Shown: positions 5,375-60,356 of the stretch, piece by piece | How the letters are laid out: each line of letters starts with the position of its first letter | Numbering within the stretch: position 1 is the stretch's first letter | IMG/VR virus record: IMGVR_UViG_3300027963_000035 | Coordinates: 1 to 64,000 of that record | Length of the DNA: 64,000 nt | Strand: one strand, 5' to 3' | Made by a program: the position numbers and the translations under genes | The notes under the pieces: model-generated | Database searches by the model: none | The model's input: the letters and a program-made list of their open reading frames with translations, nothing else | Told to the model about the DNA's origin: nothing

Positions 5375-6175
5375 ATGAAAAAGTTTAGTTTTATAAGTGG
5401 TTTACCAAGAAGTGGTAGTACTCTTTTATGTAATATATTGGCACAAAATAACGATCTTTTTGTTAGTAAAGCTACTAGCGGGTGCCATGACGTTCTTTTT
5501 GGAGTCAGAAACCAATGGGACAAGTTAATAGAGCACCAAGCAGAAGGCGTTGACCATGATCAGTTAAAAAGAGTTTTAAAATCAATTTTAGAAAACTACC
5601 ACACAACTAATAAAAATTTTATAATAGATAAAGGCAGAGGCTGGCTTAGTCTTATAGAGATGGTGCAATTCATTATTGATGAAAAACCTAAAATAATAGC
5701 CCCGGTAAGAAATATAAGCGATATACTATCTAGTTTTGAAAAACTATGGAGAAAAAGCACTGGCTTCTCTCAGTGGAATTTTGAACAAAATGAATACTTC
5801 AAGGCTCAAACTGTAGAGGGACGATGTGAAATATGGAGCAGTGCAGCTCAACCTGTAGGATTAGCTTACAATAGAATTAAAGATGCTATATCAAGAGGTT
5901 ATAAAAATGATATTTTATTTTTGGAATTTGAGGAGTTGACCAACTACCCAGGTCAAACTATGAAGAAAATTTATGATTATTTAGAATTGCCATATTATAT
6001 TCACAATTTTACTAACATAGTACAGGTGACAAAAGAGGATGATTCCGGTGTTCATAGAATACCGGGTTTGCATAACATAAGACCCGTTTTGGATCCGGTG
6101 CCCAGTGATGCTGACAAAGTTTTAGGAAATTTTTTATTAAACAAATACTCTAATTTAGAAATATGGAGAAATTAA
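5375..6175 (+). CDS. Sulfotransferase (PAPS-dependent)
   Basis: 5'-PSB loop ISGLPRSGSTLL, 3'-PB-like VRNISDILSS, and FEELTNYPGQTMKKIYDYLEL. Confidence 0.9.
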   Translation: MKKFSFISGLPRSGSTLLCNILAQNNDLFVSKATSGCHDVLFGVRNQWDKLIEHQAEGVDHDQLKRVLKSILENYHTTNKNFIIDKGRGWLSLIEMVQFIIDEKPKIIAPVRNISDILSSFEKLWRKSTGFSQWNFEQNEYFKAQTVEGRCEIWSSAAQPVGLAYNRIKDAISRGYKNDILFLEFEELTNYPGQTMKKIYDYLELPYYIHNFTNIVQVTKEDDSGVHRIPGLHNIRPVLDPVPSDADKVLGNFLLNKYSNLEIWRN

Positions 6176-6176
6176 T

Positions 6177-6629
6177 ATGGGAATATTAGATAACAACAGC
6201 CAGCAACCGTCAGAGATGGTTGCGAATAGAATTAAAAATCAAACTCGTCAAACATATGTTATGATGGTAAATGCTTTTAACGAAGGAGCTAGGATATTTT
6301 GGCGAAATCCACGAGGATTACTACCAATAGAGATAACTACAGCTTTAGGCAAAGATGCAAAAGAAGTTTTTGAACTTCATGGTAAATTAGGTCAATTATT
6401 ATGGTCTATAAAACCAGAAGATATATCTGAAGGTTTGTCTTTAGTTGGAAGTTTTTCTTATAATGAAGATGGAACTGTAACTGTAGAACCACCTGCTACT
6501 GAACCACCTGCTACTGAACCACCTGCTACTGAACCACCTGCTACTGAACCACCTGCTACTGAACCACCTGCTACTGAACCACCTGCTACTGAACCACCTG
6601 CTACTGAACCACCTGAGCTTGGTCAATAA
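6177..6629 (+). CDS. Hypothetical protein with a C-terminal (EPPAT)n tail
   Basis: 150 aa ORF coupled to its neighbours. Confidence 0.7.
   Translation: MGILDNNSQQPSEMVANRIKNQTRQTYVMMVNAFNEGARIFWRNPRGLLPIEITTALGKDAKEVFELHGKLGQLLWSIKPEDISEGLSLVGSFSYNEDGTVTVEPPATEPPATEPPATEPPATEPPATEPPATEPPATEPPATEPPELGQ
6486..6615 (+). repeat. 15-bp coding tandem repeat gaaccacctgctact x8 plus a partial copy (EPPAT)
   Basis: Identical copies read directly from the sequence. Confidence 0.95.
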
Positions 6630-6631
6630 TT

Positions 6632-7612
6632 ATGTTAGTTAAAAACTGTGTGGAGAATGGGGGCTTTATAGCTCCTTTGATTGTTCCTATTGATTCTATG
6701 ATAGGTCCATCATTAACCAATCCTACTATATATATTAATAAAATTGGAGAGATTTTTGTCAACCTCAGGAATCTTAATTATGTGCTATATCATAGCGAGA
6801 ATGGAGTTTTTGAGCACAGTTGGGGACCACTTTGTTATCTTCATCAAGAAAATGATCAAAGGTTGGTAACAAATAATATTTTATGTAAATTAGATGAAAA
6901 CTTTAATATAAAAGATAGTAAAATTATAGACACCACTTTTTTGGATGAAAATCCTATGTGGGAATTCGTTGGATTGGAAGACGGAAGATTAGTTGAGTGG
7001 GATGATAAGTTATTTTTAAGCGGAGTCAGAAGAGATACTACGGTAAACGGCGTTGGAAGAATGGAGTTGTCTGAGATAGTTTATAAAAAAGATAAGTTAA
7101 TAGAAAAGAGTAGATTACGTATTCCCGCACCGGGCATTGACAATAGTTATTGTGAAAAAAATTGGATGCCAGTTTTAAATAAAAAGTATACTTATGTTAA
7201 ATGGACAAACCCAACGGAAGTTGTTGAAGTAAATCCTGAAGATAAAACATGCAAAACAATCGTATTGAATGAATATAAAAAGTTAGAAACCGGAGATCTT
7301 AGAGGTGGCTCCCAGCTTTTATTTTTAAACGATAATTATTTGGCCATAGTTCATGAAGTAAATTTATATAGCTCAGAAGCTGGAAGAAAAAATGCAATAT
7401 ACACACATAGATTTGTTGTGTGGAATAAAGATTTTGAAATTATTGAGATCTCAGATTCTTTTTCATTTATGGGGGCAAAAATTGAATTCTGTTGTGGCAT
7501 GGCCGACTATAAAGATAAATTATTAATAACTTTTGGATTCCAAGATAATGCGGCCTATATTTTGGGAATGCCAAAAAATATATTAGGAAAATTTTTAAAA
7601 ACTTATGAATAA
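6632..7612 (+). CDS. Five-bladed beta-propeller glycosidase/phosphorylase-like protein (GH130/GH43-like)
   Basis: Motifs GLEDGRL, CEKNWMP, LRGGSQL and IEFCCGM, typical of viral GH130-like proteins found beside glycosyltransferases. Confidence 0.7.
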   Translation: MLVKNCVENGGFIAPLIVPIDSMIGPSLTNPTIYINKIGEIFVNLRNLNYVLYHSENGVFEHSWGPLCYLHQENDQRLVTNNILCKLDENFNIKDSKIIDTTFLDENPMWEFVGLEDGRLVEWDDKLFLSGVRRDTTVNGVGRMELSEIVYKKDKLIEKSRLRIPAPGIDNSYCEKNWMPVLNKKYTYVKWTNPTEVVEVNPEDKTCKTIVLNEYKKLETGDLRGGSQLLFLNDNYLAIVHEVNLYSSEAGRKNAIYTHRFVVWNKDFEIIEISDSFSFMGAKIEFCCGMADYKDKLLITFGFQDNAAYILGMPKNILGKFLKTYE

Positions 7613-8867
7613 AGAATTATTAGATTACATAAAAGACTCTGATAAAGATAAAACTAATTTTAATCTAGCATTGTGGTATGAAAACCAAAAACACCTTGCA
7701 CCGGCCTGTAGTTATTATTTAAGGTGCGCAGAACTTACTAAAGATGAAAATTTAGCATATGAATGCTTATTAAGACTTTACTTGTGTTACTATAATTTAT
7801 CAAATAGAGGTTATACTTGTGAAAATTTATTAAAAAGTGCTATTAATTTGAAGCCAAAAAGCCCAGAGGCATATTTTTTCTTAAGTCAATTTTTTGAAAG
7901 AAAACAAAATTGGATGGATGGATACTTATATGCTTCGATAGCTCTGGAGACTACAAATTGTCTCCCTTCTAATTTAATAACTACTTTTGAGTATTCATCA
8001 AAATACATGCTTGTTTTTCAAAAGGCGGTTTGTTCTTGGTGGTATGGAAAGCCAAAAGAAGCAAGAAAACTTCTTAGAAAATTAAAAGATGAATATGGAG
8101 ATCAACTTAATGAAACTTATTTAAAGTTGGTAGAAACGAACCTGATCACATTGGGCTCTGGCTCTGTTGAGCAGAGTTCTGCTACTTATTCCAAAAATTC
8201 TGATTTTGATTTGAGTTTTAAGTTTGAAGGATCTGACAATATTGAAAGAAATTTCTCTCAGGTTTATCAAGATCTTTTTGTTCTTGCTGCTTTGAATGGA
8301 AAGAAAAATGGAACCTACTTAGAGATAGGTTCTGCCCATTCTCTTCATAATAGTAACACAGCTTTACTGGAAAGAGAATTTGGATGGACTGGCGTTGGCA
8401 TAGAGATGAAACGTGAGTTAGTTGATATGCATGATAGAGAAAGAACCAATAAAGTTTTATGCGAAAATGCTCTAAAGATAAATTATGAAGAACTTTTGAG
8501 AAATAATTTTTCCAATAATGTTATTGATTATTTACAAATAGATATTGAACCTTGTAAAAACACATTTGAAGCATTACTATTAATTCCATTCGATAAATAT
8601 AAGTTCAAAGTAATAACATATGAACACGATCACTATGTCGATATAACAAGAAGCTTCAGAGATAAATCTAGAAGATATTTGAGAAGCATGGGATATACTC
8701 TTGTCTTTAATGATATATCTCCTTATGAAGATTGTAGTTTTGAAGATTGGTGGGTTCATAAAGATTTAATTGATAATTCAATATTTAAAAAATTAATTTC
8801 TACTCCTAAGCGTGAAATTAATTTAGCTAAAGATATAATGCTTAAAAAAAAAAAAATAATAAACTAA
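7605..8867 (+). CDS. TPR-like N-terminus plus FkbM-family SAM methyltransferase
   Basis: Helical TPR-like repeats, followed by YLEIGS, GVGIE, IDYLQIDIEP and VITYEHD. It ends just after an A13 run. Confidence 0.75.
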   Translation: MNKELLDYIKDSDKDKTNFNLALWYENQKHLAPACSYYLRCAELTKDENLAYECLLRLYLCYYNLSNRGYTCENLLKSAINLKPKSPEAYFFLSQFFERKQNWMDGYLYASIALETTNCLPSNLITTFEYSSKYMLVFQKAVCSWWYGKPKEARKLLRKLKDEYGDQLNETYLKLVETNLITLGSGSVEQSSATYSKNSDFDLSFKFEGSDNIERNFSQVYQDLFVLAALNGKKNGTYLEIGSAHSLHNSNTALLEREFGWTGVGIEMKRELVDMHDRERTNKVLCENALKINYEELLRNNFSNNVIDYLQIDIEPCKNTFEALLLIPFDKYKFKVITYEHDHYVDITRSFRDKSRRYLRSMGYTLVFNDISPYEDCSFEDWWVHKDLIDNSIFKKLISTPKREINLAKDIMLKKKKIIN

Positions 8868-10165
8868 AAGGAATAGGTCCTGTTAATTTTATTGGTATTG
8901 AAGAATCTTTAGAAAGAAGAGAAAATCTTAAAAAACAATTTTTGAGTCATGGAATAACAAATTTAATTCCTCATATATTTAAAAGGTATCATGAATATAA
9001 TTATAAGTTGAATGGAAATCTCGTTGATAAATTACATGAAAATAGTAAAGGCCCCATAACATCTCACATCAAAGCTCTAAAAAAATGGTATGACTCTACA
9101 AAAGAAGATTATACATTTTTTTGTGAAGATGATCTTTCATTAGAACCTGTGTCTTATTGGAACTTTACATGGGAAGAGTTTATCGATAGTCTTCCAAATA
9201 ATTGGGAGTGCGTTCAATTATCTTGGATACGCCCAAATAATGTCGATGTAGAATTTAGACAAAGACTAGCGGATGATTGGGGTGCAGCGGCATATTTGAT
9301 AAAAAGAGAGTATGCTAAAAAGATAATAGACAGTTATTATGTCAATGAAAATGAATTTAATCTGGACATAAATAATAATTTAATCCCCATTGTAGAAAAC
9401 ATAGTTTTTTCTGGGTTGGGTACAGTCTATAATATTCCAATATTTGTAGAAGACGTAAAAAATGTAAAATCAACATATCTTGGTAAAGATCCTACAGAAA
9501 TAAATGGACAGGGAGAATATCACTGGGATTCTTATAATTGGATAATTAATTGGTGGAAGAATAAGGGTCAATATATCAATCTTAATGATATGATTAAAAA
9601 AATTCCTCATATTTATGATAAGCCTCAGTTTGGAGAAAATTGGTTCACATACGCCAAACTATACAGAGATATGGTTCTTAGTTCATCCTCGGGCAGTCGA
9701 TTTGTTGAAGTTGGGTCTTGGAAGGGAAAATCTTCTAGCTTTATGGCTGTGGAAATTGCAAATTCAAATAAGAATATAGAATTTTATTGTGTTGATACTT
9801 GGATGGGAAGCTCGGAGCACAAGGAAATAAAAGAAATAGACTCTTTATATGAAACCTTTATCCAGAATATGAAACCACTGGAAGGGTATTACATTCCAAT
9901 TAAAAAACCTTCTATTGAAGCCGCAAATCAATTTCAAGATCATTCTTTGGACTTCGTGTTTATAGATGCATCTCATGAATATGAGGATGTTAAAAATGAT
10001 ATAAAGGCTTGGCTTCCAAAAGTAAAGAAAAATGGAATACTAGCTGGTCACGATTATTACACTGGTGAACAAAACTATCATCCTGGTGTAAAAAAGGCTG
10101 TCCATGAATGTTTAAATAACTTTATAACTTATGATGATTGTTTTGTATATAAAAATAATTTATAA
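8846..10165 (+). CDS. Glycosyltransferase family 25-like domain fused to a class I (Methyltransf_24-like) methyltransferase; no in-frame ATG start
   Basis: The frame is open from 8846, and the GT25-like N-motif (VNFIGIEESLERRENL) lies upstream of the track start 8942. It also has FFCEDD (DxD-like) and WGAAAYLI, then VEVGSWKGKSS, DFVFIDASH and LAGHDY. Confidence 0.7.
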   Translation, partial: KKKNNKLKGIGPVNFIGIEESLERRENLKKQFLSHGITNLIPHIFKRYHEYNYKLNGNLVDKLHENSKGPITSHIKALKKWYDSTKEDYTFFCEDDLSLEPVSYWNFTWEEFIDSLPNNWECVQLSWIRPNNVDVEFRQRLADDWGAAAYLIKREYAKKIIDSYYVNENEFNLDINNNLIPIVENIVFSGLGTVYNIPIFVEDVKNVKSTYLGKDPTEINGQGEYHWDSYNWIINWWKNKGQYINLNDMIKKIPHIYDKPQFGENWFTYAKLYRDMVLSSSSGSRFVEVGSWKGKSSSFMAVEIANSNKNIEFYCVDTWMGSSEHKEIKEIDSLYETFIQNMKPLEGYYIPIKKPSIEAANQFQDHSLDFVFIDASHEYEDVKNDIKAWLPKVKKNGILAGHDYYTGEQNYHPGVKKAVHECLNNFITYDDCFVYKNNL

Positions 10166-10181
10166 TTTAATATATATTCAT

Positions 10182-10451
10182 ATGAAAAAGTTTAAAGATT
10201 ACATTAAAGATAAAAAAGACCACAATGTTATATTGACCGGATTAAATGTTGACGAAAATTTTTGGAATAATTTTCTTTTGGTTATCAATAATAGTCAAGG
10301 ATTATCTGATCTTTTAGGAGTTTCTAAAAATAAGATTTCAACTTGGAACAAAAAAATAAGAGATGCTTTAAAAGAACATGAAAATAGAGATCAAAAAGTT
10401 TTAAGAAATAAAAAGATCATCAGAACTGGTCTTAAAAATTCTTCCAAATAA
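10182..10451 (+). CDS. Hypothetical protein with a CTS-like N-terminus (MKKFKDYIKD)
   Basis: Internal ATG of track ORF 10131..10451. Confidence 0.6.
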   Translation: MKKFKDYIKDKKDHNVILTGLNVDENFWNNFLLVINNSQGLSDLLGVSKNKISTWNKKIRDALKEHENRDQKVLRNKKIIRTGLKNSSK

Positions 10452-11175
10452 ATTCTTTTTTATTCTTATTTGATATTTTCTTTCTATTCCAATCTTTGTA
10501 TAGCTTTTTATATAATAAACTATCACTACCACTTAGTATTATTTTGCTATTGGACTTCATTAAAACTTTAGATAAGTCTATGTGCTCTTCTTCTGTCATG
10601 TAATCTTTATATGGACACTGTGATTTTCTATTTTTAACATATCTTGGTGGATCACAATACATCAAAACATTCTCGCTATTAAATATTCCAATTATTTCTA
10701 TAGCCGTATTATTAAAAACAAAAACGTCGGATAATTTTAGAGATATCTGATTCAAGTTCTCCACATTAGTGTTCCAGCTTTCAATATTTTCTATTTTTTT
10801 TCTTTTATTTTTTGAATAACAATAGTTTTTGCACAATCCCCCTCTGCTTGTTCTGTATAGGATATACTGATTTATGGCGTAATCTACATTGTTCTTAAAC
10901 TTATTACGTTTTAATTCTTTTTTGAAAGTTTGTTGATTATAGTTGATTTTTTTAAGTTTGCTTATTGCTTTTTTCCCATCATCTCTCATCACTGTTAAGA
11001 AGTTACTTATTCCATTATTTAAATCATTTAATACTGTTATTTCTGAATTTTCTTTTTTGAGAAACACATTGCAGCATCCGCAAAAAGGCTCGCAATAAAT
11101 GAGATCCTTATGGTTTTCTGGCATTTCTTCTAATATTATATCGGAAAGTTTTCTAGATTTCATTTGGCCTTTCAT
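10432..11175 (-). CDS. Dam-family DNA adenine methyltransferase with divergent motifs
   Basis: YCEPFCG (motif I), VLNDLN and MYCDPPRY (motif IV variant). Confidence 0.8.
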   Translation of the reverse strand: MKGQMKSRKLSDIILEEMPENHKDLIYCEPFCGCCNVFLKKENSEITVLNDLNNGISNFLTVMRDDGKKAISKLKKINYNQQTFKKELKRNKFKNNVDYAINQYILYRTSRGGLCKNYCYSKNKRKKIENIESWNTNVENLNQISLKLSDVFVFNNTAIEIIGIFNSENVLMYCDPPRYVKNRKSQCPYKDYMTEEEHIDLSKVLMKSNSKIILSGSDSLLYKKLYKDWNRKKISNKNKKEFIWKNF

Positions 11176-13969: not shown

Positions 13970-16521
13970 CTATACAAGGTATAACTTATACCTGGAAAAT
14001 AGGCAGATCTGTTGGCCCCTCCCAATAAAGAGGTGAGATCAGAATAGCTGCCGCCTGTATCATTGACAGTGTTTCTTGAGGTGCCTCTAATAAATTGAAT
14101 TGCAGTTAATTGATTTATATTTCTGTTGGTTGTGGCGTGGGATGCTATCATGCCACATACTTGTGGACTAGCCATGCTTGTTCCGCTTAATTTTGACACA
14201 TAGTATGTAATTGGTTTTCCGATACTTCTAATATCAGGAATACTTGGATATCCGGGAAAAATACTGTGTGTCGTTGAAGCTATCATATCCCCAGGTGAAT
14301 AAACATCTACTCTGGGTCCTGTATTGCTCCAAGTATTTTTTGTTTCTGCTACCAATCTACTTAAAGATCCTACGCTAATTACATTTGGGCAAGCCGTTGG
14401 ACTTGATCCTCTGTGATAATACGTCTCATACATGAATTCAGTAAAATATATTGGGTCCACTCCTTCTGGTAGATACCAACCAAATCCTGGGACTACCACA
14501 TTTAGTTTATTGTCATAATCCGGTCCTCCTGGCACATCTATTTTGGTAGAATTATTGCCCGCCGCCCCTACAACAACTACTCCAGAATTCATCAGGTCTG
14601 TTAAATCTGCTTCCATAGTAATAGTTCTTATTCCTATGTCTATGAATCTTTTACCTTGCATCAATGGATCCGAGTAAGCATAAGATATTAATCCAAAATT
14701 ATTTAATTGTTCTTTTGAAAACCCTCCTCCATTTGTAAATACCACATTTGGTGGTGAGGTATATCCGGAACCTTGATGTGTTATATTTATTCCTATGATT
14801 TTTCCTTGATTTACCCCGGTGCCCAGCACCGCTCTTGCCTCTGCCTTATTTCCGGTTTTAACTCCATCCACCACAGAATTTCCGCCATAAAAGCTAACAA
14901 TTGGATCGGAGGTGTAGCCTTCTCCACACAACCAGGTGTATTTTATACTTTCAACAACATATCTTTCATATATTGTTCCATTTATATTATCTTGAACTAT
15001 CTTATAAGTTGGTTCTCCGTGATAGTCTATAAAAATATCGCCGTTTTTAATTGTACTCAAATCACCATCTGTGTGATTATCCTCAAATGCAAGTATGCTT
15101 ATTTGAGCTGGGGTGGAAGGATTTCCTCCGCTTAATATAACTTCTGGAAAATTTAAATACCCTGATCCTCCATTATTAACAATGGGTTCATTCAAAACCC
15201 CAGACTTTATTTTACATGTTGCCCGTGCTGTTCTTCCTCCATTTGGAGGAGGAGGGAAAGTTATAGTAGGAGGCGTAGTATATCCACTTCCCCTGTTTTG
15301 CATCTCTATATAATAAATTCCAGACCCCTCAACCATCCTAATCGATCCTCTACCTCTTGCCGTTTGGCCTCCCGCAGGAGCAGGGCTGAATGTTATCGGA
15401 ACCCACTCAACCCACGAAGTTGGATATCGCTCGCAGGCAGCGCAAGGATACCCCTCCCCAGGATCGGTTATTGTTATTTCATATATTGTTCCATTTCCAA
15501 CTGGTGCTTTTGCTCTGGCTTGTCCTCCCCCGTAAAATGACACTGTCGGTTCATTTGTATAATTTTTTCCCTGATTTGTAATGGCTCCAGAAACAACCTT
15601 GCCAGAATCAACAGTTGTTGTTGCTGTGGCCCCAGAATAATTTCTTGTAGAAGTATATTTTACGCCTCTGTATGTTACGTCTATAATATTTCTGACATCA
15701 ATTCCACCAATGCCAACCCCGTAGCTATGATTTGTTATAGTGGGATTTTTTGTTCCTTTTTTAATATTTACTGGTTTATTTTCGTGCCAGACTTTAATAG
15801 CATGTAAATATAGATCATGCGGACCATCTGACCTCCAATCTCGGCCGTCGACCATCTCTGCGTGATATGGTGATATGTTATATATATTTGCTTTTGGTGC
15901 CCAACCCTGAGTATTTCCGGCTATTGTTCCTCCTACATGAGCACCGTGATTGTTATCTTCTGTTTCTAGATAATTGTCTGGATTTACATATGGTTCATAA
16001 TTGTATTTTTCATATGGCCGGAAATTATCCGGAACCCCATATGGATATAAAACATTGAACCAATCTATTTGGTTTACTCTGCTTCCGCCTGTTCCATCTT
16101 TTCTTAATGCAAACTCTGGATTATTTGGGTCTATGTGTCCATCTACTACAACAACATCTACATCTTCTCCTGTTGGTATTCTGTAGATTGCTGCTACTGC
16201 ATCTGACGGCGCAGCTTGCATTCTTATATTTTTTTCTTCACCATAATCACGACCAGGATCTAGAATCAGGGGTTTTATTTTATAAGGGATTTTCTGTTGA
16301 ATTGCTTCCACTCTTGGATCTTTTTCAAGTTTTTCTGCTTCTTCTTCTGTTAATCTAAAAGATAAAACTCTTCTTTGTAAATTTGTGTTATTTAAAGCTA
16401 AACATTTTTTTTCCGGAATATATTCATCTCCCGAGTCTTTTTTCATGTCATCTAAGAATGAAGTCTTATCTTTTATGTCTTTTAATACTAAATTATATAT
16501 TTTTTCTTTCATGTTATTCAC
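13966..16521 (-). CDS. Subtilisin-like (S8) serine protease with inserted virion-protein-type repeats
   Basis: Catalytic motifs DVVVVDG, HGAHVGG, AAGN and GTSMASP. About 350 aa of G-x-GYT-x-x-P-x-V-x-F-x-GG repeats are inserted between the His and Asn motifs. Confidence 0.9.
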   Translation of the reverse strand: MNNMKEKIYNLVLKDIKDKTSFLDDMKKDSGDEYIPEKKCLALNNTNLQRRVLSFRLTEEEAEKLEKDPRVEAIQQKIPYKIKPLILDPGRDYGEEKNIRMQAAPSDAVAAIYRIPTGEDVDVVVVDGHIDPNNPEFALRKDGTGGSRVNQIDWFNVLYPYGVPDNFRPYEKYNYEPYVNPDNYLETEDNNHGAHVGGTIAGNTQGWAPKANIYNISPYHAEMVDGRDWRSDGPHDLYLHAIKVWHENKPVNIKKGTKNPTITNHSYGVGIGGIDVRNIIDVTYRGVKYTSTRNYSGATATTTVDSGKVVSGAITNQGKNYTNEPTVSFYGGGQARAKAPVGNGTIYEITITDPGEGYPCAACERYPTSWVEWVPITFSPAPAGGQTARGRGSIRMVEGSGIYYIEMQNRGSGYTTPPTITFPPPPNGGRTARATCKIKSGVLNEPIVNNGGSGYLNFPEVILSGGNPSTPAQISILAFEDNHTDGDLSTIKNGDIFIDYHGEPTYKIVQDNINGTIYERYVVESIKYTWLCGEGYTSDPIVSFYGGNSVVDGVKTGNKAEARAVLGTGVNQGKIIGINITHQGSGYTSPPNVVFTNGGGFSKEQLNNFGLISYAYSDPLMQGKRFIDIGIRTITMEADLTDLMNSGVVVVGAAGNNSTKIDVPGGPDYDNKLNVVVPGFGWYLPEGVDPIYFTEFMYETYYHRGSSPTACPNVISVGSLSRLVAETKNTWSNTGPRVDVYSPGDMIASTTHSIFPGYPSIPDIRSIGKPITYYVSKLSGTSMASPQVCGMIASHATTNRNINQLTAIQFIRGTSRNTVNDTGGSYSDLTSLLGGANRSAYFPGISYTLYS

Positions 16522-17734
16522 CCCATCCTGAAATATTATTTTGATTTATCATTCTTAATAATCCCCAATTAATATAATTTTGATCAATATCTCTAGATCT
16601 ATTATAATTTGATATTGAACTAACCTGCATGTTGTCGAAAATACAATTGGCGCCCAAAGCCCTTATGCCTATACCACCATATCCTGGGATGCTTGTATTA
16701 ACGGCAGAAACTATTTGTGTATTATTAAAATACAGTGTTAAAGAACTTCCCAATGTTTTAAAAGCTAGTACGCCTACGGTGTTTGTAGAATTTATTGGTG
16801 ATGAACTTAGTAATGACCATGATCCATTGTTGGACCATATTTGACCGTAATATGTAGTTCCATTTTTTGCAATCATTCCCAAATACATATACCCATCACC
16901 AAATACTCCATATGGATCGGCTGTATATCTAGTTATAATTCCTCCTCCTGAACCCACAGGCATATATGATCTTGCTGCTCCCGTAGGTATCGATGAATTT
17001 ATTAAATCCACATAACAACTAATAAAAGAATCTTTTTCTCTTATTCCATTAAGTGTCATTAAAGAGATGGATGGATCCACGCCCACTGCAGAATTATTAG
17101 ATATTATAAAATTTCCTATGCGTTCACGCCAATAACCTGATATGTAAGGGTTATTTTGTCTGTTGAAATCATCATAGAATGGCAAGGATGCTTCCACTAT
17201 TGCTGGAGGAGCTATTGTTAGAGTAGGAGTGCTGGTTAATGTGGGCGTGCTTGTTTTGGTAGGAGTTAATGTTGGGGTTGATGTTGGGGTGGGAGTGGAA
17301 GTTCTGGTTGGTGTTAAAGTGGGGGTGGAAGTTTTAGTTGGAGTTAATGTTTTAGTATTGGTTGGTGTAGGAGTATTTGTTAAAGTAGGAGTAGGCGTTT
17401 TAGTTGGAGTTAAAGTTGGAGTACTTGTTTTTGTCACTGTGGGAGTGGGAGTGACTTGCATTAAGGTCATACCTCCTATCCAACTGGATGAGCATGCTGG
17501 TATTACTGTCCATCCTACCCCGTTCCAGAAACAATGATAATTGTCTACGCAACTGGTGTAGTTTGATCTGTTTTGTGTTCCTGGTGCGGTTTGAGATGCC
17601 GATGATACTTTGTAGTTTCTCGCTGATTCAATTTTTGCTATGTAATCTAAATTTCTCTGATCCCAGGATAAAGAATTGGGTGCACCGTATCTCGCTCTTA
17701 AATTAAAAGGATCACTAAAAACAATGTTCGCCAT
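16514..17734 (-). CDS. Virion/adhesin protein: Pro-Thr linker plus C-terminal concanavalin-like lectin domain
   Basis: A long (TPT)n linker followed by FYDDFNR...GGIGIRA...IFDN, a LamG/ConA-type sandwich. Confidence 0.65.
   Translation of the reverse strand: MANIVFSDPFNLRARYGAPNSLSWDQRNLDYIAKIESARNYKVSSASQTAPGTQNRSNYTSCVDNYHCFWNGVGWTVIPACSSSWIGGMTLMQVTPTPTVTKTSTPTLTPTKTPTPTLTNTPTPTNTKTLTPTKTSTPTLTPTRTSTPTPTSTPTLTPTKTSTPTLTSTPTLTIAPPAIVEASLPFYDDFNRQNNPYISGYWRERIGNFIISNNSAVGVDPSISLMTLNGIREKDSFISCYVDLINSSIPTGAARSYMPVGSGGGIITRYTADPYGVFGDGYMYLGMIAKNGTTYYGQIWSNNGSWSLLSSSPINSTNTVGVLAFKTLGSSLTLYFNNTQIVSAVNTSIPGYGGIGIRALGANCIFDNMQVSSISNYNRSRDIDQNYINWGLLRMINQNNISGWGE
17218..17455 (-). repeat. Imperfect coding Pro/Thr low-complexity repeat (TPTLTPTKTS...)
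   Basis: Seen in the translation. Confidence 0.85.
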
Positions 17735-47625: not shown

Positions 47626-48412
47626 TTCTCTTTGCAATCTTGGACACATACTCTAAAGAAGGGGTGTGGTCCATTTTAGATAAAAGATTTATTGGATTAT
47701 CGGATGCCATGGAGAAATTCATATCATTACTTTTATATAGTTTTTTATTAAACATGGGATTAACTCCATGCCTATAGCTTATTATATCTTTTAATTGACT
47801 CTCTATTAGATTTCCTTCGATATCATTACTGGCTAATATTTTACTGACTTTATGTTTGCACAAAGTCGCAAATAATGCCACTTTATCAACTTGATATTTG
47901 TTTGGATCCAATCCCACCATTTGACATAATATTGCCATATCCTTAAAGAAATTTAATGATAATTCATTAAAAACAAACACTTCACCCAGATTAAGCCATT
48001 TATCCATTTCATTTTTTGATAGTCTAATTAATTTGGCATATCTTTTATTATAAACAAAGTCAGGATCAATAGAAAATATAAATTGTTTATCTTGTATTTT
48101 TATATCTTTTTGTATGACTGTATCGGGATCTAGTACGGTCACGGGTAAACTTAGTATGTTGTTCTCCATAAGAGTGTAAAGAGAACCCCATTTATTTAAT
48201 TTGAGTATACCTGTTTCTCTGCCTATATTTTTATGAATATATTTATTGGCATGTGTTGAAAGATTTTTATTATTTTTAAGATACTCTTTGTCTGCCTGAG
48301 CCACCGATATATATAGATTGTCCTCTAGACCCAATACCTTGAAGCTTTCTATCAATAATTCTAGTTGCCAATTATGGTAGTAAGAATCTTCTACCGAGAC
48401 AAAATAATTCAT
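47609..48412 (-). CDS. GT-A glycosyltransferase resembling plant GT95/GT96 (Hyp-arabinosyl/Ser-galactosyl transferases)
   Basis: FVSVEDSYYHNWQLELLIESF, LNKWG and VLDPD parallel the recalled SGT1/HPAT motifs FSVEC-x-x-YFDWQ...HSF, NKP and ILDAD. Confidence 0.6.
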   Translation of the reverse strand: MNYFVSVEDSYYHNWQLELLIESFKVLGLEDNLYISVAQADKEYLKNNKNLSTHANKYIHKNIGRETGILKLNKWGSLYTLMENNILSLPVTVLDPDTVIQKDIKIQDKQFIFSIDPDFVYNKRYAKLIRLSKNEMDKWLNLGEVFVFNELSLNFFKDMAILCQMVGLDPNKYQVDKVALFATLCKHKVSKILASNDIEGNLIESQLKDIISYRHGVNPMFNKKLYKSNDMNFSMASDNPINLLSKMDHTPSLEYVSKIAKRIINRI

Positions 48413-52824: not shown

Positions 52825-52896
52825 TTTAATTTTTTCTATTTATATGAACTATATATTTATAGAAGTATATACAACTTTAGAAAAAAGGAGTTTTCT

Positions 52897-57404: not shown

Positions 57405-57447
57405 GCCAACTCAATGTTTAAATCGATTGAGGCCGAAAAATTGATTA

Positions 57448-59604
57448 TTATATTCTTTGATAACAATTAGATAACCCCACCTCAAGATTTGCTGTCCCAC
57501 TATAACTAGGGGGTTCGCAATCGCACCCTGCCAAGAAGCAAGTCATTCGGTCGGTGCCCAAACTGCCGGCAGTACTTTCCCAATGTGCGAATCCAATATA
57601 AGGTATTCTCCATATCCATTCGCACATATCTGGACACTCTGGTGGGAGGGCTTCACATTTACAATCTTTGCCTCGTTTTTCATTTTCTTTACAAGGTGGG
57701 AATCTGGGCTTCCCAGATGCGTCTTTTGCTTCATCGCAAGGACAATAACAATCAAGGTCGTCCCATAAAGGTTTTCCTCCCACTTTCGGACAGTCTTCTT
57801 TTCTTACCGCATTGGATGCCCCGGGAGCATAAACCGTGTTATCACAATCACAAGCGCATTTTCCTATGTCAAACTTAAATCCTTTAGATTCACATTTTTC
57901 TTTAATTTCATCTTTGGGGCAGACGCACATACAATAATCATCTTTTTTATAGTTTTTATTTAGAATTTTTTTGCAATCTGGAGAATCCGGATTTGATACA
58001 CACTTACACTTACACTCAGACTCATCCCATACAGCAGAACCAAGTTCATTGACATAATTGCAATAGACACACCTGCCCATACACTCAGAATATCCGAAAC
58101 CTTTAACACTTACCTCGCCCGGTGGAAAATCCCCATATCCAGGAATTTTACCTTCACTAGGGTCTGGCCATGGATCGCCCGGTTGCCAATCTCCCCAACC
58201 ACCTGCTGGAGGACAACACTCTCCTTCTTGACCAGGTTCGGCCCATTCTGGCGGTATATTCAATGGTCTTCTGGGGCCTCCGTCTGGGCACGGCGGAAGA
58301 GGGAGATTTTGATTATCGCTGCTATAGGTGATACCAGAAACAATAAAATTAAAACTATTTAAAAGCAAATAGTGTGTGGCTCCTGATGGGCCTAAAGCAT
58401 TTAATGAATTATCTGCTTGAGTTATTATTTCATTAATATCACCTAATAAATCTGAATTACTAAAAGTAAGATCTGCAGAAAACACGTCTCCAGCAGCCCA
58501 TCTTCCTAATATTGAATCTTCATTCATGGTTCCGCTGAAAAAGGTTGTGTTTCCATTTTGGGATGGAATTGTTATGATGCTTGTTGTTGTGAATGAACCC
58601 GAGCTTCCTCCAAAGAAAGAGAAACTCCCGTTCATTTTTGTGAAATTTTCTGAATTTTTTAATTGACTCGGCAGGAAATCATTAGTAAGCAAGTCTGCGT
58701 CACCAGTTAAATTAAAACTAATATCATTTATCATAAGATTCTGTAGTTGATCTGATGCTGGCTTGTAAACTTTTATTGATATTTTGTCTGATGTTGAAGA
58801 AGTGTTTATATCATAAATATCATCAAGAATCTTGATGCTCAATAATCCTCTGAATGTGTCTATGACAATTGGTGGTCCAACTGTTGTTGTTACTATAACT
58901 TGATCTAAATAAATTTCTAATATATTGTTTCCAGGATTGGTTACCGATATGTTTTCTTGATATGTTTCAAACCCATCGGCAGATATTATTAAATCAAATT
59001 GAAGAGGTTCTTCTAAACATGGTTTTATACTATCTCTTACTCCTATGCATACCATGTTGTTATGAGGAATAAAATTATTATTTAATAAATCTAAAAATGA
59101 ATCAGGATAATCTACTCCTCCCCATTTTATATTTTGTATATCTACGGAAATATTTTCTGGTATGATATTATTGTCATTCCTGACCACTAGTGTTATGGTT
59201 GTTTTTGGGAAATCATAATTATTCATTTCTACTTCTATGTTTATTAGTGTACCTTGGTTTTGATCTAATATAATTTCATTATCAAATTTTTCAAACCATA
59301 ATACTTGATTTTCTTTATTTGTTACATAATATCCTTTGATATTAACTGTTTGTCCTAAATTTTTCCATATTATTCTATTTTTATATTTATATTTTATATA
59401 ATTTGCTGGGGTTTGATTCGTTGGTTCCCATAATAGTGGATTTAAAAATTTTGGAGAATAACCAATGAACGATGCTTCTTCAAATTCAATAGAAGATGGA
59501 ATATCCTCACAATCCAAAAGATCATTTATGAATAATTTTGCGGTTAAGTTGGTTGAATTTAATAATTCTTTTAATAATTTTGAATTTAATGGTATTGTGC
59601 TCAT
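57448..59604 (-). CDS. Putative virion protein with a Cys-rich C-terminal repeat region
   Basis: N-terminal ~235 aa paralogous to 59607..60356; C-terminal CxC repeats. Confidence 0.7.
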   Translation of the reverse strand: MSTIPLNSKLLKELLNSTNLTAKLFINDLLDCEDIPSSIEFEEASFIGYSPKFLNPLLWEPTNQTPANYIKYKYKNRIIWKNLGQTVNIKGYYVTNKENQVLWFEKFDNEIILDQNQGTLINIEVEMNNYDFPKTTITLVVRNDNNIIPENISVDIQNIKWGGVDYPDSFLDLLNNNFIPHNNMVCIGVRDSIKPCLEEPLQFDLIISADGFETYQENISVTNPGNNILEIYLDQVIVTTTVGPPIVIDTFRGLLSIKILDDIYDINTSSTSDKISIKVYKPASDQLQNLMINDISFNLTGDADLLTNDFLPSQLKNSENFTKMNGSFSFFGGSSGSFTTTSIITIPSQNGNTTFFSGTMNEDSILGRWAAGDVFSADLTFSNSDLLGDINEIITQADNSLNALGPSGATHYLLLNSFNFIVSGITYSSDNQNLPLPPCPDGGPRRPLNIPPEWAEPGQEGECCPPAGGWGDWQPGDPWPDPSEGKIPGYGDFPPGEVSVKGFGYSECMGRCVYCNYVNELGSAVWDESECKCKCVSNPDSPDCKKILNKNYKKDDYCMCVCPKDEIKEKCESKGFKFDIGKCACDCDNTVYAPGASNAVRKEDCPKVGGKPLWDDLDCYCPCDEAKDASGKPRFPPCKENEKRGKDCKCEALPPECPDMCEWIWRIPYIGFAHWESTAGSLGTDRMTCFLAGCDCEPPSYSGTANLEVGLSNCYQRI

Positions 59605-59606
59605 TG

Positions 59607-60356
59607 TTAGCCAGGTTCTTGAGTTGTTGTGGTTGGTTCCTCTGTTGTGGTTGTTAGATTAATTTCTATAAATTTATTTCCAACTTCTTCTATTATTATG
59701 TTTTCTTTATATTCGCTATAACCGATGGCTGTCACAGTTATATCAAAACTCAATGGATCTCCGTGGCAAATATTTATTGTATTATCAACACCTATGCACA
59801 AGATATTTTGATTGGGGGTCCAATCACTTTCCATCAAATCCATTAAAGCATAAGGATAACTTACACTTCCCCATTTAATATTATCTATAAATATATTAGT
59901 GTTTTGTGGTTTATCTATATCTCCTTTGACTACTATTGTTATTGTATTTTTCGGATAATCATAATTATTTAAATAAACCCTAATATCCACCAGGACTTTT
60001 TGATTTTGTTGTAGTTCTATTGAGTTATCAAATTTTCCAAACCAAAGCACTTCGTTTTTACCATTGGTTACAAAATATCCATTAATGACTTCACTTTGGG
60101 CAATATTTGTGTTTCCCCAAATTAAAGATTCTTGGTAATCGCATTGTGAATAATTATTAGCTGCAATATTCAATTTCCATAAATTTGAATTTAATAATTT
60201 AGAAGAATATCCATTAAAAACTGGTTCCTGGAATTCAAAATCCAAAGGCAGGTCCTCACAATCTCCGAGATCGTTTGTGAAAAGTTTGGCTTTATATTCT
60301 CCTGAAGACAATAGCTCTTTTAGAGTAACGCTTTTTGTTGGTATTATTGCACGCAT
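59607..60356 (-). CDS. Putative virion protein, paralogue of the N-terminus of 57448..59604
   Basis: LKELL...AKLFxNDLxDCEDxP...GYSxKxLN...W; Thr-rich tail. Confidence 0.7.
   Translation of the reverse strand: MRAIIPTKSVTLKELLSSGEYKAKLFTNDLGDCEDLPLDFEFQEPVFNGYSSKLLNSNLWKLNIAANNYSQCDYQESLIWGNTNIAQSEVINGYFVTNGKNEVLWFGKFDNSIELQQNQKVLVDIRVYLNNYDYPKNTITIVVKGDIDKPQNTNIFIDNIKWGSVSYPYALMDLMESDWTPNQNILCIGVDNTINICHGDPLSFDITVTAIGYSEYKENIIIEEVGNKFIEINLTTTTEEPTTTTQEPG

What the first reader, a model, noticed from the sequence alone, without database searches (positions are those of the whole stretch)
5375..59660. Possible virion glycan coat: mucin-like linkers on many structural proteins plus glycan-building and decorating enzymes
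Seen in sequence: Thr/Pro tracts occur in at least seven proteins - (EPPAT)8 at 6486, PT at ~17218-17455, (PTTTE)7 at 19235, TTTTTTEP and (PTTTTVA)n in 28144..30558, (PT)n in 30620..31057, VTTTVGPP in 57448..59604 and TTTTEEPTTTT in 59607..60356. The same window encodes GT25-like, GT95/96-like, GH130-like, two methyltransferase and two sulfotransferase domains. Established: some actinobacteriophages glycosylate their virions using glycosyltransferases encoded near structural genes. Inference: a methylated and sulfated O-glycan shield or adhesion coat, which would extend the known examples to sulfation.
Basis: inference. Interest (0 to 1): 0.68.

Follow-up and report, generated by a model that had tools for sequence, protein, structure and literature searches.

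The report
Fibre-linked glycan and sulfate enzymes, huge phage
A freshwater giant phage carries real threonine/proline-rich tails on many of its proteins and real sugar-, methyl- and sulfate-transferring enzymes, but the enzymes belong to older tail-fibre-linked gene modules found mostly in phages that have no such tails, so a mucin-like glycan coat on those tails remains unproven.

Summary
The window is the first 64 kb of a 251-kb contig, about half of a huge T4-like freshwater phage. All seven Thr/Pro tracts exist at the stated places. Three are perfect DNA tandem repeats. One sits on a sulfotransferase-like enzyme, and one (VTTTVGPP) is trivial. Genome-wide, at least 14 proteins carry such tracts, mostly modular adhesin-like proteins without signal peptides.

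The enzymes are largely real:
- a TPST-like sulfotransferase;
- a Sulfotransfer_2-like protein;
- a GH130-like protein;
- a TPR-FkbM methyltransferase;
- a GT25-like/Methyltransf_24 fusion;
- a GT-A-fold transferase (GT95/96 membership could not be tested).

These enzymes form two conserved modules beside tail-fibre genes: fibre, then sulfotransferase, then a small protein; and GH130-like, then TPR-FkbM, then GT25-like. The modules occur in about 70 other viral loci and two cultured cyanophages, which have essentially no T/P tracts. The enzymes therefore do not depend on the linkers.

My best reading (about 0.4) is cytoplasmic glycosylation, methylation and possibly sulfation of fibre proteins. 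Host-envelope remodelling (about 0.3) is the main rival. The specific T/P mucin-coat idea is about 0.12. Nothing here shows glycosylation directly.

The parts
3..917 (+). Collagen-like tail-fibre protein, cut off by the contig start. It has (GLQGTQ)12 encoded by a perfect 18-bp x 12 repeat. It belongs to the G-X-Q collagen class that often flanks the glycan cassette in other phages.
   Evidence: Pfam Collagen E 1.4e-15; phrog_5073 tail fiber E 3.6e-28; TRF; G-X-Q statistics
923..5151 (+). Two Thr/Ser-rich proteins (353 and 1055 aa) with no family match. They occupy the fibre or receptor-binding position directly upstream of the sulfotransferase.
   Evidence: Composition; no Pfam or PHROG hit; in other lineages this position holds Mtd_N or BppL_N proteins
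5375..6175 (+). PAPS-type sulfotransferase (266 aa). It is 67-75 % identical across distant phage lineages, and its nearest solved relatives are tyrosylprotein sulfotransferases.
   Evidence: PF13469/PF00685 above cut-off; phrog_27463 E 2e-57; alignment A2; PDB profile top hit TPST1 E 0.003; Foldseek top 10 all TPST, but on a low-confidence model, pLDDT 60
6177..6629 (+). Small conserved partner protein (core of about 105 aa) that follows the sulfotransferase in four other lineages. Here it carries an (EPPAT)8 C-terminal tail (6486-6614).
   Evidence: 95 homologues, nearly all 106-120 aa without the tail; sulfotransferase immediately upstream in L113-L120 and L127; tail-assembly-chaperone context in L125
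6632..7612 (+). GH130-like protein (a beta-mannoside phosphorylase/mannosyltransferase-type family) and first gene of the conserved glycan cassette.
   Evidence: Atlas score 0.95 to a PF04041 cluster; 11 of 28 homologues give weak PF04041 hits; 54 % and 48 % identical to genes annotated 'MGP protein' and 'beta-mannosyltransferase' in cyanophages
7605..8867 (+). Protein with an N-terminal TPR part and a C-terminal FkbM-type SAM methyltransferase; second gene of the cassette.
   Evidence: Weak TPR hits; PF05050 E 0.0086; always directly follows the GH130-like gene; 44.5 % identical over 400 aa to its S-SCSM2R counterpart, and residues 5-180 match the gene annotated FkbM in DSL-LC02
8942..10165 (+). 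Fusion of a GT25-like glycosyltransferase (residues 1 to about 220, EDD motif at residue 62) with a Methyltransf_24 domain (255-372).
   Evidence: phrog_2835 glucosyltransferase E 1.8e-34; PF13578 E 2.1e-22; PF01755 E 0.023; the homologous L047 segment is above the PF01755 cut-off
10432..11175 (-). D12-class N6-adenine DNA methyltransferase. It acts on DNA and is not part of any glycan pathway.
   Evidence: PF02086 E 3.8e-16
16514..17734 (-). Two-domain protein with an 80-residue degenerate PT linker (17216-17452). It overlaps the upstream S8 subtilase gene by 8 nt.
   Evidence: Translation; the linker is conserved but variable in L015 and L016
19183..19992 (-). Sulfotransfer_2-like protein with a C-terminal (PTTTE)7 tail (19231-19344). 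Homologues in sister phages lack the tail, and in L016 the homologue lies directly upstream of the GH130-like gene.
   Evidence: the tail has 6 copies in L015
28144..30558 (+). DUF5122 beta-propeller protein with a Cys-rich region, a T-run (30154-30183) and a (PTTTTVA)n C-terminal tail (30448-30555).
   Evidence: Pfam; translation; TRF 21 bp x 4 at 100 %
30620..31057 (+). Small Stig1-like Cys-rich protein with a (PT)n C-terminal tail (30977-31051).
   Evidence: PF04885 E 1.9e-8; translation
47609..48412 (-). GT-A-fold glycosyltransferase with a DPD motif at residue 95. It lies in a non-structural neighbourhood.
   Evidence: AF2 pLDDT 88.5; Foldseek to GT6 ABO transferases E 1e-7; a homologue in another huge phage sits among AAA, SET, patatin and poly(A) polymerase genes
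57448..60356 (-). Tandem paralogues (718 and 249 aa) that share an N-terminal domain. The shorter one ends in TTTTEEPTTTTQEP (59613-59654). The longer one has only VTTTVGPP (58870-58893) before a Cys/Pro-rich C-terminal part.
   Evidence: Translation; no family hits

Best explanation
The window is the tail-fibre and head-morphogenesis region of a freshwater huge T4-like myophage. The contig is about 50 % of the genome.

(1) The Thr/Pro tracts are a trait of this phage's own clade.
- Some are old, degenerate PT linkers between domains.
- Others are very recent slippage-generated tandem repeats that form free C-terminal tails.
- They sit mostly on modular lectin/adhesin-like proteins (LamG, beta-propeller, fn3, YHYH, CotH+LTD, Cys-rich). 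These proteins have no export signal, so they can only reach the outside as virion parts or at lysis.
- Tracts also sit on one sulfotransferase-like enzyme and on a small fibre-module protein.

(2) The enzymes belong to two older, widely distributed phage modules that travel with tail-fibre genes.
- Module A: fibre/RBP gene, then a TPST-like sulfotransferase, then a small 106-117-aa protein.
- Module B: GH130-like, then TPR-FkbM methyltransferase, then GT25-like (+ methyltransferase). It often lies beside G-X-Q collagen-like fibre genes.

Most likely mechanism (inferred, not shown). During infection these soluble cytoplasmic enzymes use host nucleotide sugars, SAM and PAPS to build a short methyl-capped glycan, and in this clade perhaps a sulfated one. 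They attach it to fibre proteins, with the TPR part serving as the protein-docking element. The T/P tails may be additional acceptors in this clade, but the enzymes do not require them.
For: Identity of the phage:
- T4-type portal, MCP, prohead protease and TerL.
- MCP 75 % identical to the 595-kb uncultured phage LR756511.
- IMG/VR record with CheckV completeness 50 %.
- Held by freshwater metagenomes.

Operon layout:
- Fibre genes, sulfotransferase, small protein, GH130-like, TPR-FkbM and GT25-MT lie on one strand with 1-nt spacers or overlaps.

Module A:
- It is conserved with identical spacing behind Mtd_N or BppL_N fibre proteins in four further lineages.
- The sulfotransferase is 67-75 % identical across them.

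Module B:
- It occurs in about 70 IMG/VR loci and 12 phage-like MAG contigs.
- In DSL-LC02 it is flanked by genes annotated 'collagen-like protein' and 'tail fiber protein'; in S-SCSM2R it lies next to a baseplate wedge gene.
- 17 of 69 non-redundant loci have a G-X-Q collagen-like ORF within reach.
- Homologues are fused into 700-1478-aa proteins with several transferase domains, like the virus-encoded glycan builders.

Other points:
- Sulfotransferases of either family recur beside the cassette, in L016, L017, L024/25, L041 and L057.
- No TM segment or signal peptide in any enzyme or T/P protein.
- The GH130-like family was found in no isolate genome among 185,579 species, only on short MAG contigs with phage-like content.
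Against: - There is no direct evidence of any glycoprotein.
- The published reading of such genes in large cyanomyoviruses is host cell-wall/LPS modification (PMC12801897; PMC1079782).
- GT25 enzymes are classically LPS-core transferases, and GH130 enzymes are classically phosphorylases.
- The position of collagen-like ORFs relative to the cassette inside the loci is not significantly closer than random (12 observed against 10.2 expected).
- In typical T4-like cyanophage layouts the cassette lies at the fibre/phoH-gp59-gp32 boundary, a known hyperplastic region, so adjacency to fibres may be positional rather than functional.
- No recognised protein-O-glycosyltransferase family was found: no GT41, and no GT27, GT39 or similar among the window's scanned ORFs.
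- The MCP has no T/P extension.
- The complex prediction for the sulfotransferase plus the small protein gave no verdict.
Confidence: 0.4

Rival explanations
1. Host-envelope remodelling. The glycosyl-, methyl- and sulfotransferases act on host LPS, capsule or cell-wall glycans during infection, for superinfection exclusion, grazer avoidance or release. The T/P tracts are plain flexible linkers with no glycan.
For: - This is the standard interpretation for the homologous genes in large cyanomyoviruses (PMC12801897; PMC1079782).
- phrog_2835 is filed under 'moron, auxiliary metabolic gene and host takeover'.
- GT25 is an LPS-core family.
- Multi-domain GT+MT proteins resemble O-antigen polymerase/terminator enzymes (established knowledge).
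- The cassette occurs without T/P tracts.
- Three further GT2 genes are scattered elsewhere in the genome.
Against: - The enzymes sit in tight, strand-consistent linkage with fibre/RBP genes across unrelated lineages.
- They carry a TPR domain rather than membrane anchors.
- No flippase, Wzx/Wzy or ABC-transporter genes were seen near the cassette in any locus inspected, although this was not searched systematically.
- The family appears to be phage-only.
Confidence: 0.3
2. The T/P tracts are mucin-like acceptor domains on virion proteins, and the window's enzymes decorate them with a methylated, sulfated O-glycan coat.
For: - At least 14 proteins carry tracts, and six end in free T/P tails or lie within 13 residues of the C-terminus. 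This recalls the C-terminal glycan sites reported for mycobacteriophage capsid and tail-tube proteins (as summarised in PMC12619734).
- The small fibre-module protein has independently grown P/E/T tails in several lineages.
- The tract proteins have adhesin-type domains and no export signal.
- All four tract-rich records (G000-G003) carry cassette genes, and the tract-free relative LR756511 lacks the GH130-like and GT25-like genes.
Against: - Five of the six tract-poor records examined still carry the cassette: DSL-LC02, S-SCSM2R and G004-G006.
- About 70 cassette loci have no long tract nearby.
- One tract is on an enzyme.
- The perfect DNA repeats point to recent slippage rather than long co-evolution with the enzymes.
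- The G000-G003 agreement is phylogenetically non-independent.
- The sulfotransferase in the operon looks TPST-like.
Confidence: 0.12
3. DNA hypermodification. Some of the transferases glycosylate or methylate modified bases in phage DNA to evade restriction.
For: - Phage GTs commonly act on DNA (reviewed in PMC12619734).
- A D12 DNA methylase lies next to the GT25-MT gene.
- phrog_2675, matched by the MT24 domain, is labelled 'DNA methyltransferase'.
- The GT-A protein 47609-48412 sits among non-structural genes.
Against: - No thymidylate-synthase-like hydroxymethylase on the 251-kb contig. The contig is only about half of the genome, so this is weak.
- The cassette is linked to fibre genes, not to nucleotide metabolism.
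- Sulfotransferases, a GH130-like protein and a TPR domain have no known role in DNA modification.
Confidence: 0.06

Closest known systems
Mycobacteriophage virion glycosylation (Freeman et al. 2023, as summarised in PMC12619734)
   Same: Phage-encoded glycosyltransferases lie next to structural genes, and short C-terminal extensions serve as candidate acceptor sites.
   Different: There the acceptors are the capsid and tail-tube subunits, and glycosylation has been shown by experiment. Here the MCP has no extension, and the enzymes are of other families (GH130-like, GT25-like, FkbM, sulfotransferases) and are linked to fibre genes. Nothing has been shown biochemically.
Chlorovirus PBCV-1 capsid glycan machinery (A064R: two GT domains plus a methyltransferase domain). 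This comparison is from my own recall and was not checked in a paper here.
   Same: The virus encodes soluble multi-domain GT+methyltransferase proteins that build a methylated glycan in the cytoplasm, independently of host secretory glycosylation.
   Different: PBCV-1 is a eukaryotic virus whose glycan is N-linked on the MCP. No sequence relationship was tested, and no sulfation is known there.
'Cell wall synthesis and modification'/LPS gene clusters of large cyanomyoviruses (P-SSM2, S-SCSM1, S-SCSM2R)
   Same: These share true homologues. The GH130-like gene is 54 % identical to the S-SCSM2R 'MGP' gene, and the TPR-FkbM neighbour is 44.5 % identical over 400 aa. GT25-type genes are also present.
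   Different: Those papers assign the genes to host-surface modification without a test. Here they are joined to a sulfotransferase module and to T/P-rich proteins, in a non-cyanophage-like huge phage that has no psbA.
Tyrosylprotein sulfotransferases (TPST1/2; bacterial RaxST, the latter from recall)
   Same: The PAPS-binding PSB loop (PRSGST) is present. The best sequence-profile and fold matches of 5375-6175 are TPSTs.
   Different: Similarity is weak: E 0.003, TM about 0.47, on a model with pLDDT 60. The acceptor is unknown, and no conserved Tyr exists in the adjacent small protein.
PT/Thr-rich interdomain linkers of bacterial carbohydrate-active and surface proteins, and mucin PTS domains (established knowledge)
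   Same: They have the same composition and variable length. The tracts lie between folded modules (CotH-LTD, propeller-fn3), and the repeats expand by slippage.
   Different: Several tracts here are free C-terminal tails on proteins without export signals. No GT27-type initiating transferase was found.

Membership tests
Mycobacteriophage-type virion O-glycosylation | Glycosyltransferase genes adjacent to virion structural genes | tested here: met
   The cassette lies directly downstream of the fibre genes 3-5151 on the same strand. The same holds in DSL-LC02.
Mycobacteriophage-type virion O-glycosylation | Acceptor extension at the C-terminus of the major capsid and tail-tube subunits | tested here: not met
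   The MCP 38750-40174 ends 21 residues after the Gp23 domain and has no T/P tail. The tail tube lies outside the window and was not examined.
Mycobacteriophage-type virion O-glycosylation | Glycans demonstrated on virion proteins | not testable with these tools
   This needs virions and glyco-MS.
Mucin-like O-glycosylated PTS domain | Long Pro/Thr/Ser-rich tandem-repeat tracts | tested here: met
Mucin-like O-glycosylated PTS domain | A dedicated initiating protein O-glycosyltransferase (GT27, GT41, GT39 or similar) | tested here: not met
   None appeared among the Pfam scans of 60 window ORFs. No PF13844 match on the contig. Unknown families cannot be excluded.
CAZy GT25 | Match to PF01755 above the cut-off, and an acidic EDD/DxD motif | tested here: inconclusive
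   The window protein scores 15 bits against a cut-off of 24. The EDD motif is at residue 62. phrog_2835 E 1.8e-34. The homologous L047 segment scores 38 bits.
CAZy GH130 | Match to PF04041 and a five-bladed propeller with the catalytic acid | tested here: inconclusive
   There is no hit for the window protein itself. 11 of 28 homologues give weak hits (best E 0.0015). Atlas score 0.95 to a PF04041-bearing cluster. No PDB sequence hit. The fold was not predicted.
CAZy GT95/GT96 (Hyp-arabinosyl / Ser-galactosyl transferases) | Sequence membership in these families | not testable with these tools
   No Pfam hit. The protein has a GT-A fold only, and its nearest solved structures are GT6 enzymes.
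PAPS sulfotransferase, Sulfotransfer_3/TPST-like | Pfam match above the cut-off, a 5'-PSB loop and a 3'-PB region | tested here: met
   PF13469 scores 54.8 bits against a cut-off of 27. GLPRSGST and R112/S120 are invariant. The acceptor class remains undetermined.
Sulfotransfer_2 (carbohydrate sulfotransferase type) | Pfam match above the cut-off, with RSGS and RDPxxRxxS motifs | tested here: inconclusive
   PF03567 scores 16.8 bits against a cut-off of 22. The motifs are present. 24 of 30 Atlas hits are Sulfotransfer_2 clusters.
Cyanophage 'LPS/CWSM' auxiliary gene clusters | Homology to the annotated cyanophage genes | tested here: met
   54 % and 44.5 % identity to S-SCSM2R ORF194 and ORF195.
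Cyanophage 'LPS/CWSM' auxiliary gene clusters | Action on the host envelope | not testable with these tools
   The cited papers do not test this either.

The most novel reading that the evidence does not exclude
Aquatic T4-like phages carry a dedicated, fibre-linked post-translational modification system. A GH130-like/GT25-like/FkbM machine would put methyl-capped glycans on proline-free G-X-Q collagen-like fibres and other fibre proteins. A TPST-like sulfotransferase would sulfate phage proteins. Candidate acceptors in this phage are the fibre-module small protein, the fibres themselves, and the extraordinary acidic Tyr-rich protein 54442-54819 (15 Tyr and 80 Asp/Glu in 125 residues), which would become a sulfated polyanion, perhaps a DNA mimic or a head-internal protein. 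In this huge-phage clade the slippage-grown T/P tails would add extra acceptor sites. That would be the first sulfated phage virion or phage-protein modification.
Probability: 0.15. Interest if true: 0.8.

Novelty: new variant of a known kind. Interest (0 to 1): 0.5.

Why it matters
Phage virion glycosylation has so far been shown only for actinobacteriophages. The homologous genes in large aquatic myoviruses are routinely filed as host 'LPS/cell-wall' auxiliary genes without any test.

The analysis shows that these enzymes form two conserved modules that travel with tail-fibre and receptor-binding genes across many uncultured phages and two cultured cyanophages. This makes the alternative, modification of the fibres themselves, directly testable in DSL-LC02 or S-SCSM2R.

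If fibres of abundant freshwater and marine phages are glycosylated, methylated or sulfated, this would bear on host recognition, particle stability, stickiness to organic matter and immune or grazer recognition. Sulfation of a phage protein would be new.

The negative result also matters: the Thr/Pro linkers, however striking, are a clade-specific feature and are not what the enzymes depend on.

Tried and rejected
- **T4 late promoter.** TATAAATA is not enriched (16 matches against 9.6 ± 2.9 expected) and is not placed upstream of structural genes. A GTATATAC-like motif precedes several window genes, including the 28144 T/P protein and the scaffold gene, but not the enzyme operon. It is too weak to assign a temporal class.
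- **PDB sequence searches.** Single-sequence searches for 6632-7612, 7605-8867, 8942-10165 and 19183-19992 gave nothing usable. Profile searches for the Sulfotransfer_2-like and GH130-like families gave nothing significant.
- **Complex prediction.** The job for the sulfotransferase plus the small protein returned no verdict (score 0.00). It is evidence neither for nor against binding.
- **Collagen position test.** The position of collagen-like ORFs relative to the cassette was not significant (12 observed against 10.2 expected within two genes). Only co-presence in loci is reported.
- **Prolyl-hydroxylase lead.** A P4H-like 2OG-Fe(II) oxygenase (G000 119100-119735) abuts the largest PT-repeat gene. 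The adjacency is conserved only in near relatives (L098, L099) and not in the 49 %-identical L100. Chance adjacency is about 8 %, so I kept it as a lead only.
- **Bacterial context.** The search for the GH130-like family returned only short MAG contigs with phage-like content from many phyla, so it gave no host or pathway clue.
- **DNA-modification check.** No thymidylate-synthase-like gene was found, but the contig is only half a genome.
- **Host clues.** No psbA was found. The host remains unknown.
- **Reads.** Only Logan unitigs were available. They break at the EPPAT repeat, so copy number is inferred only roughly from k-mer depth. No RNA run holds the locus.
- **Literature.** No paper in the held library links sulfotransferases to phage fibres, and none mentions the beta-mannosyltransferase/FkbM pair in phages. 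Freeman et al. 2023 could not be read.

Full report
**What the window is.** The window is the first 64 kb of a single 251,265-bp contig with GC 35.7 %. It is an IMG/VR virus record without terminal repeats, and CheckV puts it at about 50 % complete.
- It encodes a T4-type portal that contains an intein (11459-13969), the major capsid protein gp23 (38750-40174), the prohead protease (41113-41802) and the large terminase (54836-56608).
- The capsid protein is 75 % identical to that of the 595-kb uncultured phage LR756511, and at most 36 % identical to anything else in the phage collection.
- Near-identical DNA is held by several freshwater and lake metagenomes.
- The object is therefore a fragment of a freshwater huge T4-like myophage. 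Its host is unknown: there is no psbA, and the bacterial-genome scan gave no clue.

**Check of the Thr/Pro tracts.**
- They fall into two kinds.
  - (EPPAT)8, (PTTTE)7 and (PTTTTVA)4-5 are encoded by 15-, 15- and 21-bp units that are 100 % identical at the DNA level. They are therefore very recent slippage expansions.
  - The PT tracts at 17216-17452 and 30977-31051 are codon-degenerate and older.
- VTTTVGPP in 57448-59604 is only eight residues long and should not count.
- Copy number differs between close relatives: six PTTTE units in L015 against seven here.
- Public unitigs break at the EPPAT repeat. Its k-mer depth is about 7-8 times the flanks in one sample and about 4-5 times in two others. 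This is compatible with length polymorphism but is only a rough measure.
- The trait is not special to the window. Across the contig 13 proteins are flagged by a strict criterion, and the EPPAT protein, which that criterion misses, brings the count to at least 14. Within-protein shuffles give a mean of 1.7.
- Outside the window the tracts lie between recognisable extracellular-type modules: CotH and lamin-tail domain; DUF5122 propeller and fn3; and in YHYH and LamG proteins near a baseplate gene.
- Six tracts end the protein or lie within 13 residues of the end.
- No tract protein, and no enzyme, has a hydrophobic segment that could serve as a signal peptide or membrane anchor. If the adhesin-like proteins act outside the cell, they do so as virion parts or after lysis. 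That is the only support for calling them 'structural', since none matched a PHROG structural family.
- One tract, (PTTTE)7, is on a sulfotransferase-like enzyme.

**Check of the enzymes.**
- 5375-6175 is a PAPS-type sulfotransferase, above the Pfam cut-off.
- 19183-19992 is a probable Sulfotransfer_2 member. Its Pfam hit is below the cut-off, it has RSGS and RDPVERFRS motifs, and 24 of its 30 nearest language-model clusters carry PF03567.
- 8942-10165 joins a GT25-like domain to a Methyltransf_24 domain.
  - The GT25-like domain matches phrog_2835 'glucosyltransferase' at E 1.8e-34 and has an EDD motif at residue 62.
  - Its own Pfam GT25 hit is only E 0.023, but the homologous segment of a 1016-aa relative scores 38 bits against a cut-off of 24.
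  - The Methyltransf_24 domain is confirmed.
- 7605-8867 has TPR repeats and a weak FkbM match.
  - Its N-terminal TPR part (residues 5-180) matches the gene annotated 'FkbM family methyltransferase' in Synechococcus phage DSL-LC02.
  - It is 44.5 % identical over 400 residues to its counterpart in S-SCSM2R.
- 6632-7612 is GH130-like only remotely.
  - The window protein itself gives no Pfam hit.
  - 11 of 28 family members give weak PF04041 hits and no other family recurs.
  - The Atlas places it next to a PF04041 cluster.
  - GenBank annotators call its cyanophage homologues 'MGP protein' and 'beta-mannosyltransferase'.
Its nearest solved relatives are GT6 enzymes, and it has a DPD motif. 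Family membership cannot be tested here.
- 10432-11175 is a D12 DNA adenine methylase and is irrelevant to glycans.
- Three more GT2 genes lie elsewhere on the contig.

**What the enzymes belong to.** The comparative data separate two modules.
- Module A: fibre gene, then sulfotransferase, then small protein.
  - The 105-residue core of 6177-6629 has 95 homologues at 45-81 % identity. Nearly all are 106-120 aa long and lack the tail.
  - In four further lineages the gene directly upstream, one base away, is the same 266-272-aa sulfotransferase (67-75 % identical).
  - In three of those lineages the genes upstream of the sulfotransferase include fibre or receptor-binding proteins with Mtd_N or BppL_N domains. 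In the fourth (L127) the upstream ORF has no family hit.
  - In one contig without the sulfotransferase, the small protein follows a tail-assembly-chaperone gene.
  - The short C-terminal tail of this small protein is P/E/T-rich in many members. It has expanded independently at least twice: (EPPAT)8 here and (PEVT/PEAT)n in P0100.
- Module B: GH130-like, then TPR-FkbM, then GT25-like.
  - It occurs in about 70 IMG/VR loci.
  - It also occurs on 12 short 'MAG' contigs from many phyla whose gene content is phage-like. The FkbM homologue follows the GH130-like gene in all 12.
  - The domains are often fused into 700-1478-aa proteins. One example holds GT2, GT7C and GT25 domains.
  - In DSL-LC02 the module lies between genes annotated 'collagen-like protein' and 'tail fiber protein'. 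In S-SCSM2R it follows a baseplate wedge gene.
  - In many loci it lies between large fibre-like ORFs and phoH-gp59-gp32.
  - Seventeen of 69 non-redundant loci hold a collagen-like ORF. These are of one peculiar kind, G-X-Q with Thr/Leu/Ile/Ser at X and no proline, and the window's first gene, (GLQGTQ)12, is of this kind.
  - The positional test inside the loci is not significant, so I treat this association as suggestive only.
- Sulfotransferases of one or the other family recur next to module B (L016, L017, L024/25, L041, L057). In L016 the Sulfotransfer_2-like gene occupies the slot directly upstream of the GH130-like gene.

- Long T/P tracts near the cassette occur only in this phage's close relatives (L015, L016, L017, L024/25).
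- Counts of the two DNA patterns over whole records:

| Record | (ACN)6 matches | (CCNACN)3 matches |
|---|---|---|
| G000 (this contig) | 26 | 4 |
| G001 | 89 | 11 |
| G002 | 2 | 43 |
| G003 | 0 | 12 |
| DSL-LC02 | 2 | 0 |
| S-SCSM2R | 0 | 0 |
| G004 (100 % complete), G005, G006 | 0 | 0 |
| LR756511 | 0 | 0 |

- DSL-LC02, S-SCSM2R, G004, G005 and G006 all carry cassette genes.
- LR756511 has no tracts, no GH130-like gene and no GT25-like gene.
- The enzymes are therefore common without tracts.
- The only agreement, four tract-rich records with the cassette against one tract-free relative without it, comes from a single clade and is not independent evidence.
- The enzymes do not depend on the linkers. 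Whether the linkers, where present, are used as acceptors remains open.

**What the sulfotransferase might act on.**
- The profile of module-A sulfotransferases finds TPST1 as its best solved relative (E 0.003, PAPS-loop region only).
- The ten best Foldseek hits are all tyrosylprotein sulfotransferases, ahead of the heparan and other carbohydrate sulfotransferases. However, the model is poor (pLDDT 60, TM about 0.47). This is a lead, not a result.
- The adjacent small protein has no conserved tyrosine.
- The window does hold a remarkable candidate, 54442-54819, directly upstream of the terminase. It has 125 residues, of which 80 are Asp/Glu and 15 are Tyr, each Tyr embedded in acidic residues (for example DEDDYEDEEEEDYEDEEDEEDDDDYEY). 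It is unique on the contig and present only in the nearest relative. From established knowledge this is what TPST substrates look like, but the link is speculation.

**Mechanism and weights.**
- Shown:
  - the tracts;
  - the identities of the enzymes, at the levels of confidence stated above;
  - the two conserved modules and their linkage to fibre genes;
  - the independence of the modules from T/P tracts;
  - the absence of export signals.
- Inferred: that soluble enzymes with a TPR docking part, encoded behind fibre genes, modify fibre proteins in the cytoplasm with a methyl-capped and possibly sulfated glycan (0.4).
- The main rival is the published view that such genes remodel the host envelope (0.3).
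- The remainder is unknown function.

**Comparison with known systems.**
- The closest experimentally shown case is mycobacteriophage virion glycosylation. The window shares the GT-next-to-structural-genes feature but fails the capsid C-terminal-extension feature.
- Functionally the GT+methyltransferase fusions resemble the chlorovirus capsid-glycan enzymes. This comparison is from recall and was not tested.
- By homology the cassette belongs with the cyanophage 'cell-wall/LPS' genes, whose function has not been tested.
- I found no paper in the held library that links a sulfotransferase to phage fibres, and none that describes the GH130-like/FkbM pair.
- I therefore rate this as a new variant of a known kind, of moderate interest. 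It can be tested in two cultured cyanophages.

- Read laying was given 5,401 letters.
- No genetic code other than table 11 was used.
- The large representative search was not used.

Noticed in passing
window 54442-54819 (+): Extremely acidic Tyr-rich ORF directly upstream of the large terminase. It has 125 aa, of which 80 are Asp/Glu and 15 are Tyr, all in acidic context, and it is partly encoded by a (GATGAA)n repeat. It is unique on the contig, present (138 aa) in the nearest relative G001, and absent upstream of TerL in G002 and LR756511. It looks like a tyrosine-sulfation substrate or a DNA-mimic/polyanion.
   Followed up: partly
G000:C1 112,950-247,458 (outside the window): A strongly enriched upstream motif, (A)GTTTCCCTCCGGTACGGT, occurs 57 times. 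Many copies lie 10-100 nt upstream of small ORFs, and all but two are on the minus strand. None lies in the window. It is probably a phage-specific early or middle promoter.
   Followed up: partly
window 11459-13969 (+): The T4-type portal gene carries an intein: the Intein_splicing domain spans residues 115-331, ahead of the Portal_T4 domain at 347-718.
   Followed up: no
G000:C1 119100-119735 (-), next to 116085-119096 (+): A prolyl-4-hydroxylase-type 2OG-Fe(II) oxygenase (PF13640) abuts, tail to tail, the largest PT-repeat protein (1003 aa with ten tracts). This recalls the chlorovirus P4H that hydroxylates viral proline-rich repeats (PMC3634087). The adjacency is conserved only in near relatives.
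   Followed up: partly
window 1-217; also G002:C1 1-113: The contig starts inside the perfect 18-bp x 12 collagen repeat, and the related record G002 starts inside a (PT)n repeat. Assemblies of this clade seem to break at these repeats, so repeat copy numbers and contig ends should be treated with care.
   Followed up: no
window 13966-16521 (-): An 851-aa S8 subtilase has an insert of repeated G-x-G-Y-T-x-x-P-x-V-x-F-like modules. It is co-transcribed (8-nt overlap) with the PT-linker protein 16514-17734. An S8 peptidase also lies near the cassette in S-SCSM2R, but it showed no detectable similarity at E 1e-4.
   Followed up: no
window 28080-28143, 40175-40220, 43642-43775, 52825-52896 and others: A GTATATAC-like motif lies 20-55 nt upstream of several window genes, including the 28144 propeller, the scaffold gene 40220, 41821, 43776, 52309 and 52897. 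It is about 9-fold enriched in upstream regions and may be a late promoter. It is absent upstream of the enzyme operon.
   Followed up: partly
window 6486-6614: Public unitigs end at both sides of the EPPAT repeat. Repeat k-mer depth relative to the flanks is about 7-8x in run X1 but about 4-5x in X2 and X3, which hints at copy-number differences between lake samples.
   Followed up: partly
G000:C1 248354-250708 (-): A protein combines a CotH kinase-like domain and a lamin-tail domain, joined by a (PTSTPTQTS)n linker. This is an unusual pairing for a phage.
   Followed up: no
window 49819-51351: A haem-dependent oxidative N-demethylase alpha-subunit-like gene (PF11927) lies next to a patatin-like phospholipase gene. 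A patatin gene also neighbours the GT-A homologue in another huge phage.
   Followed up: no
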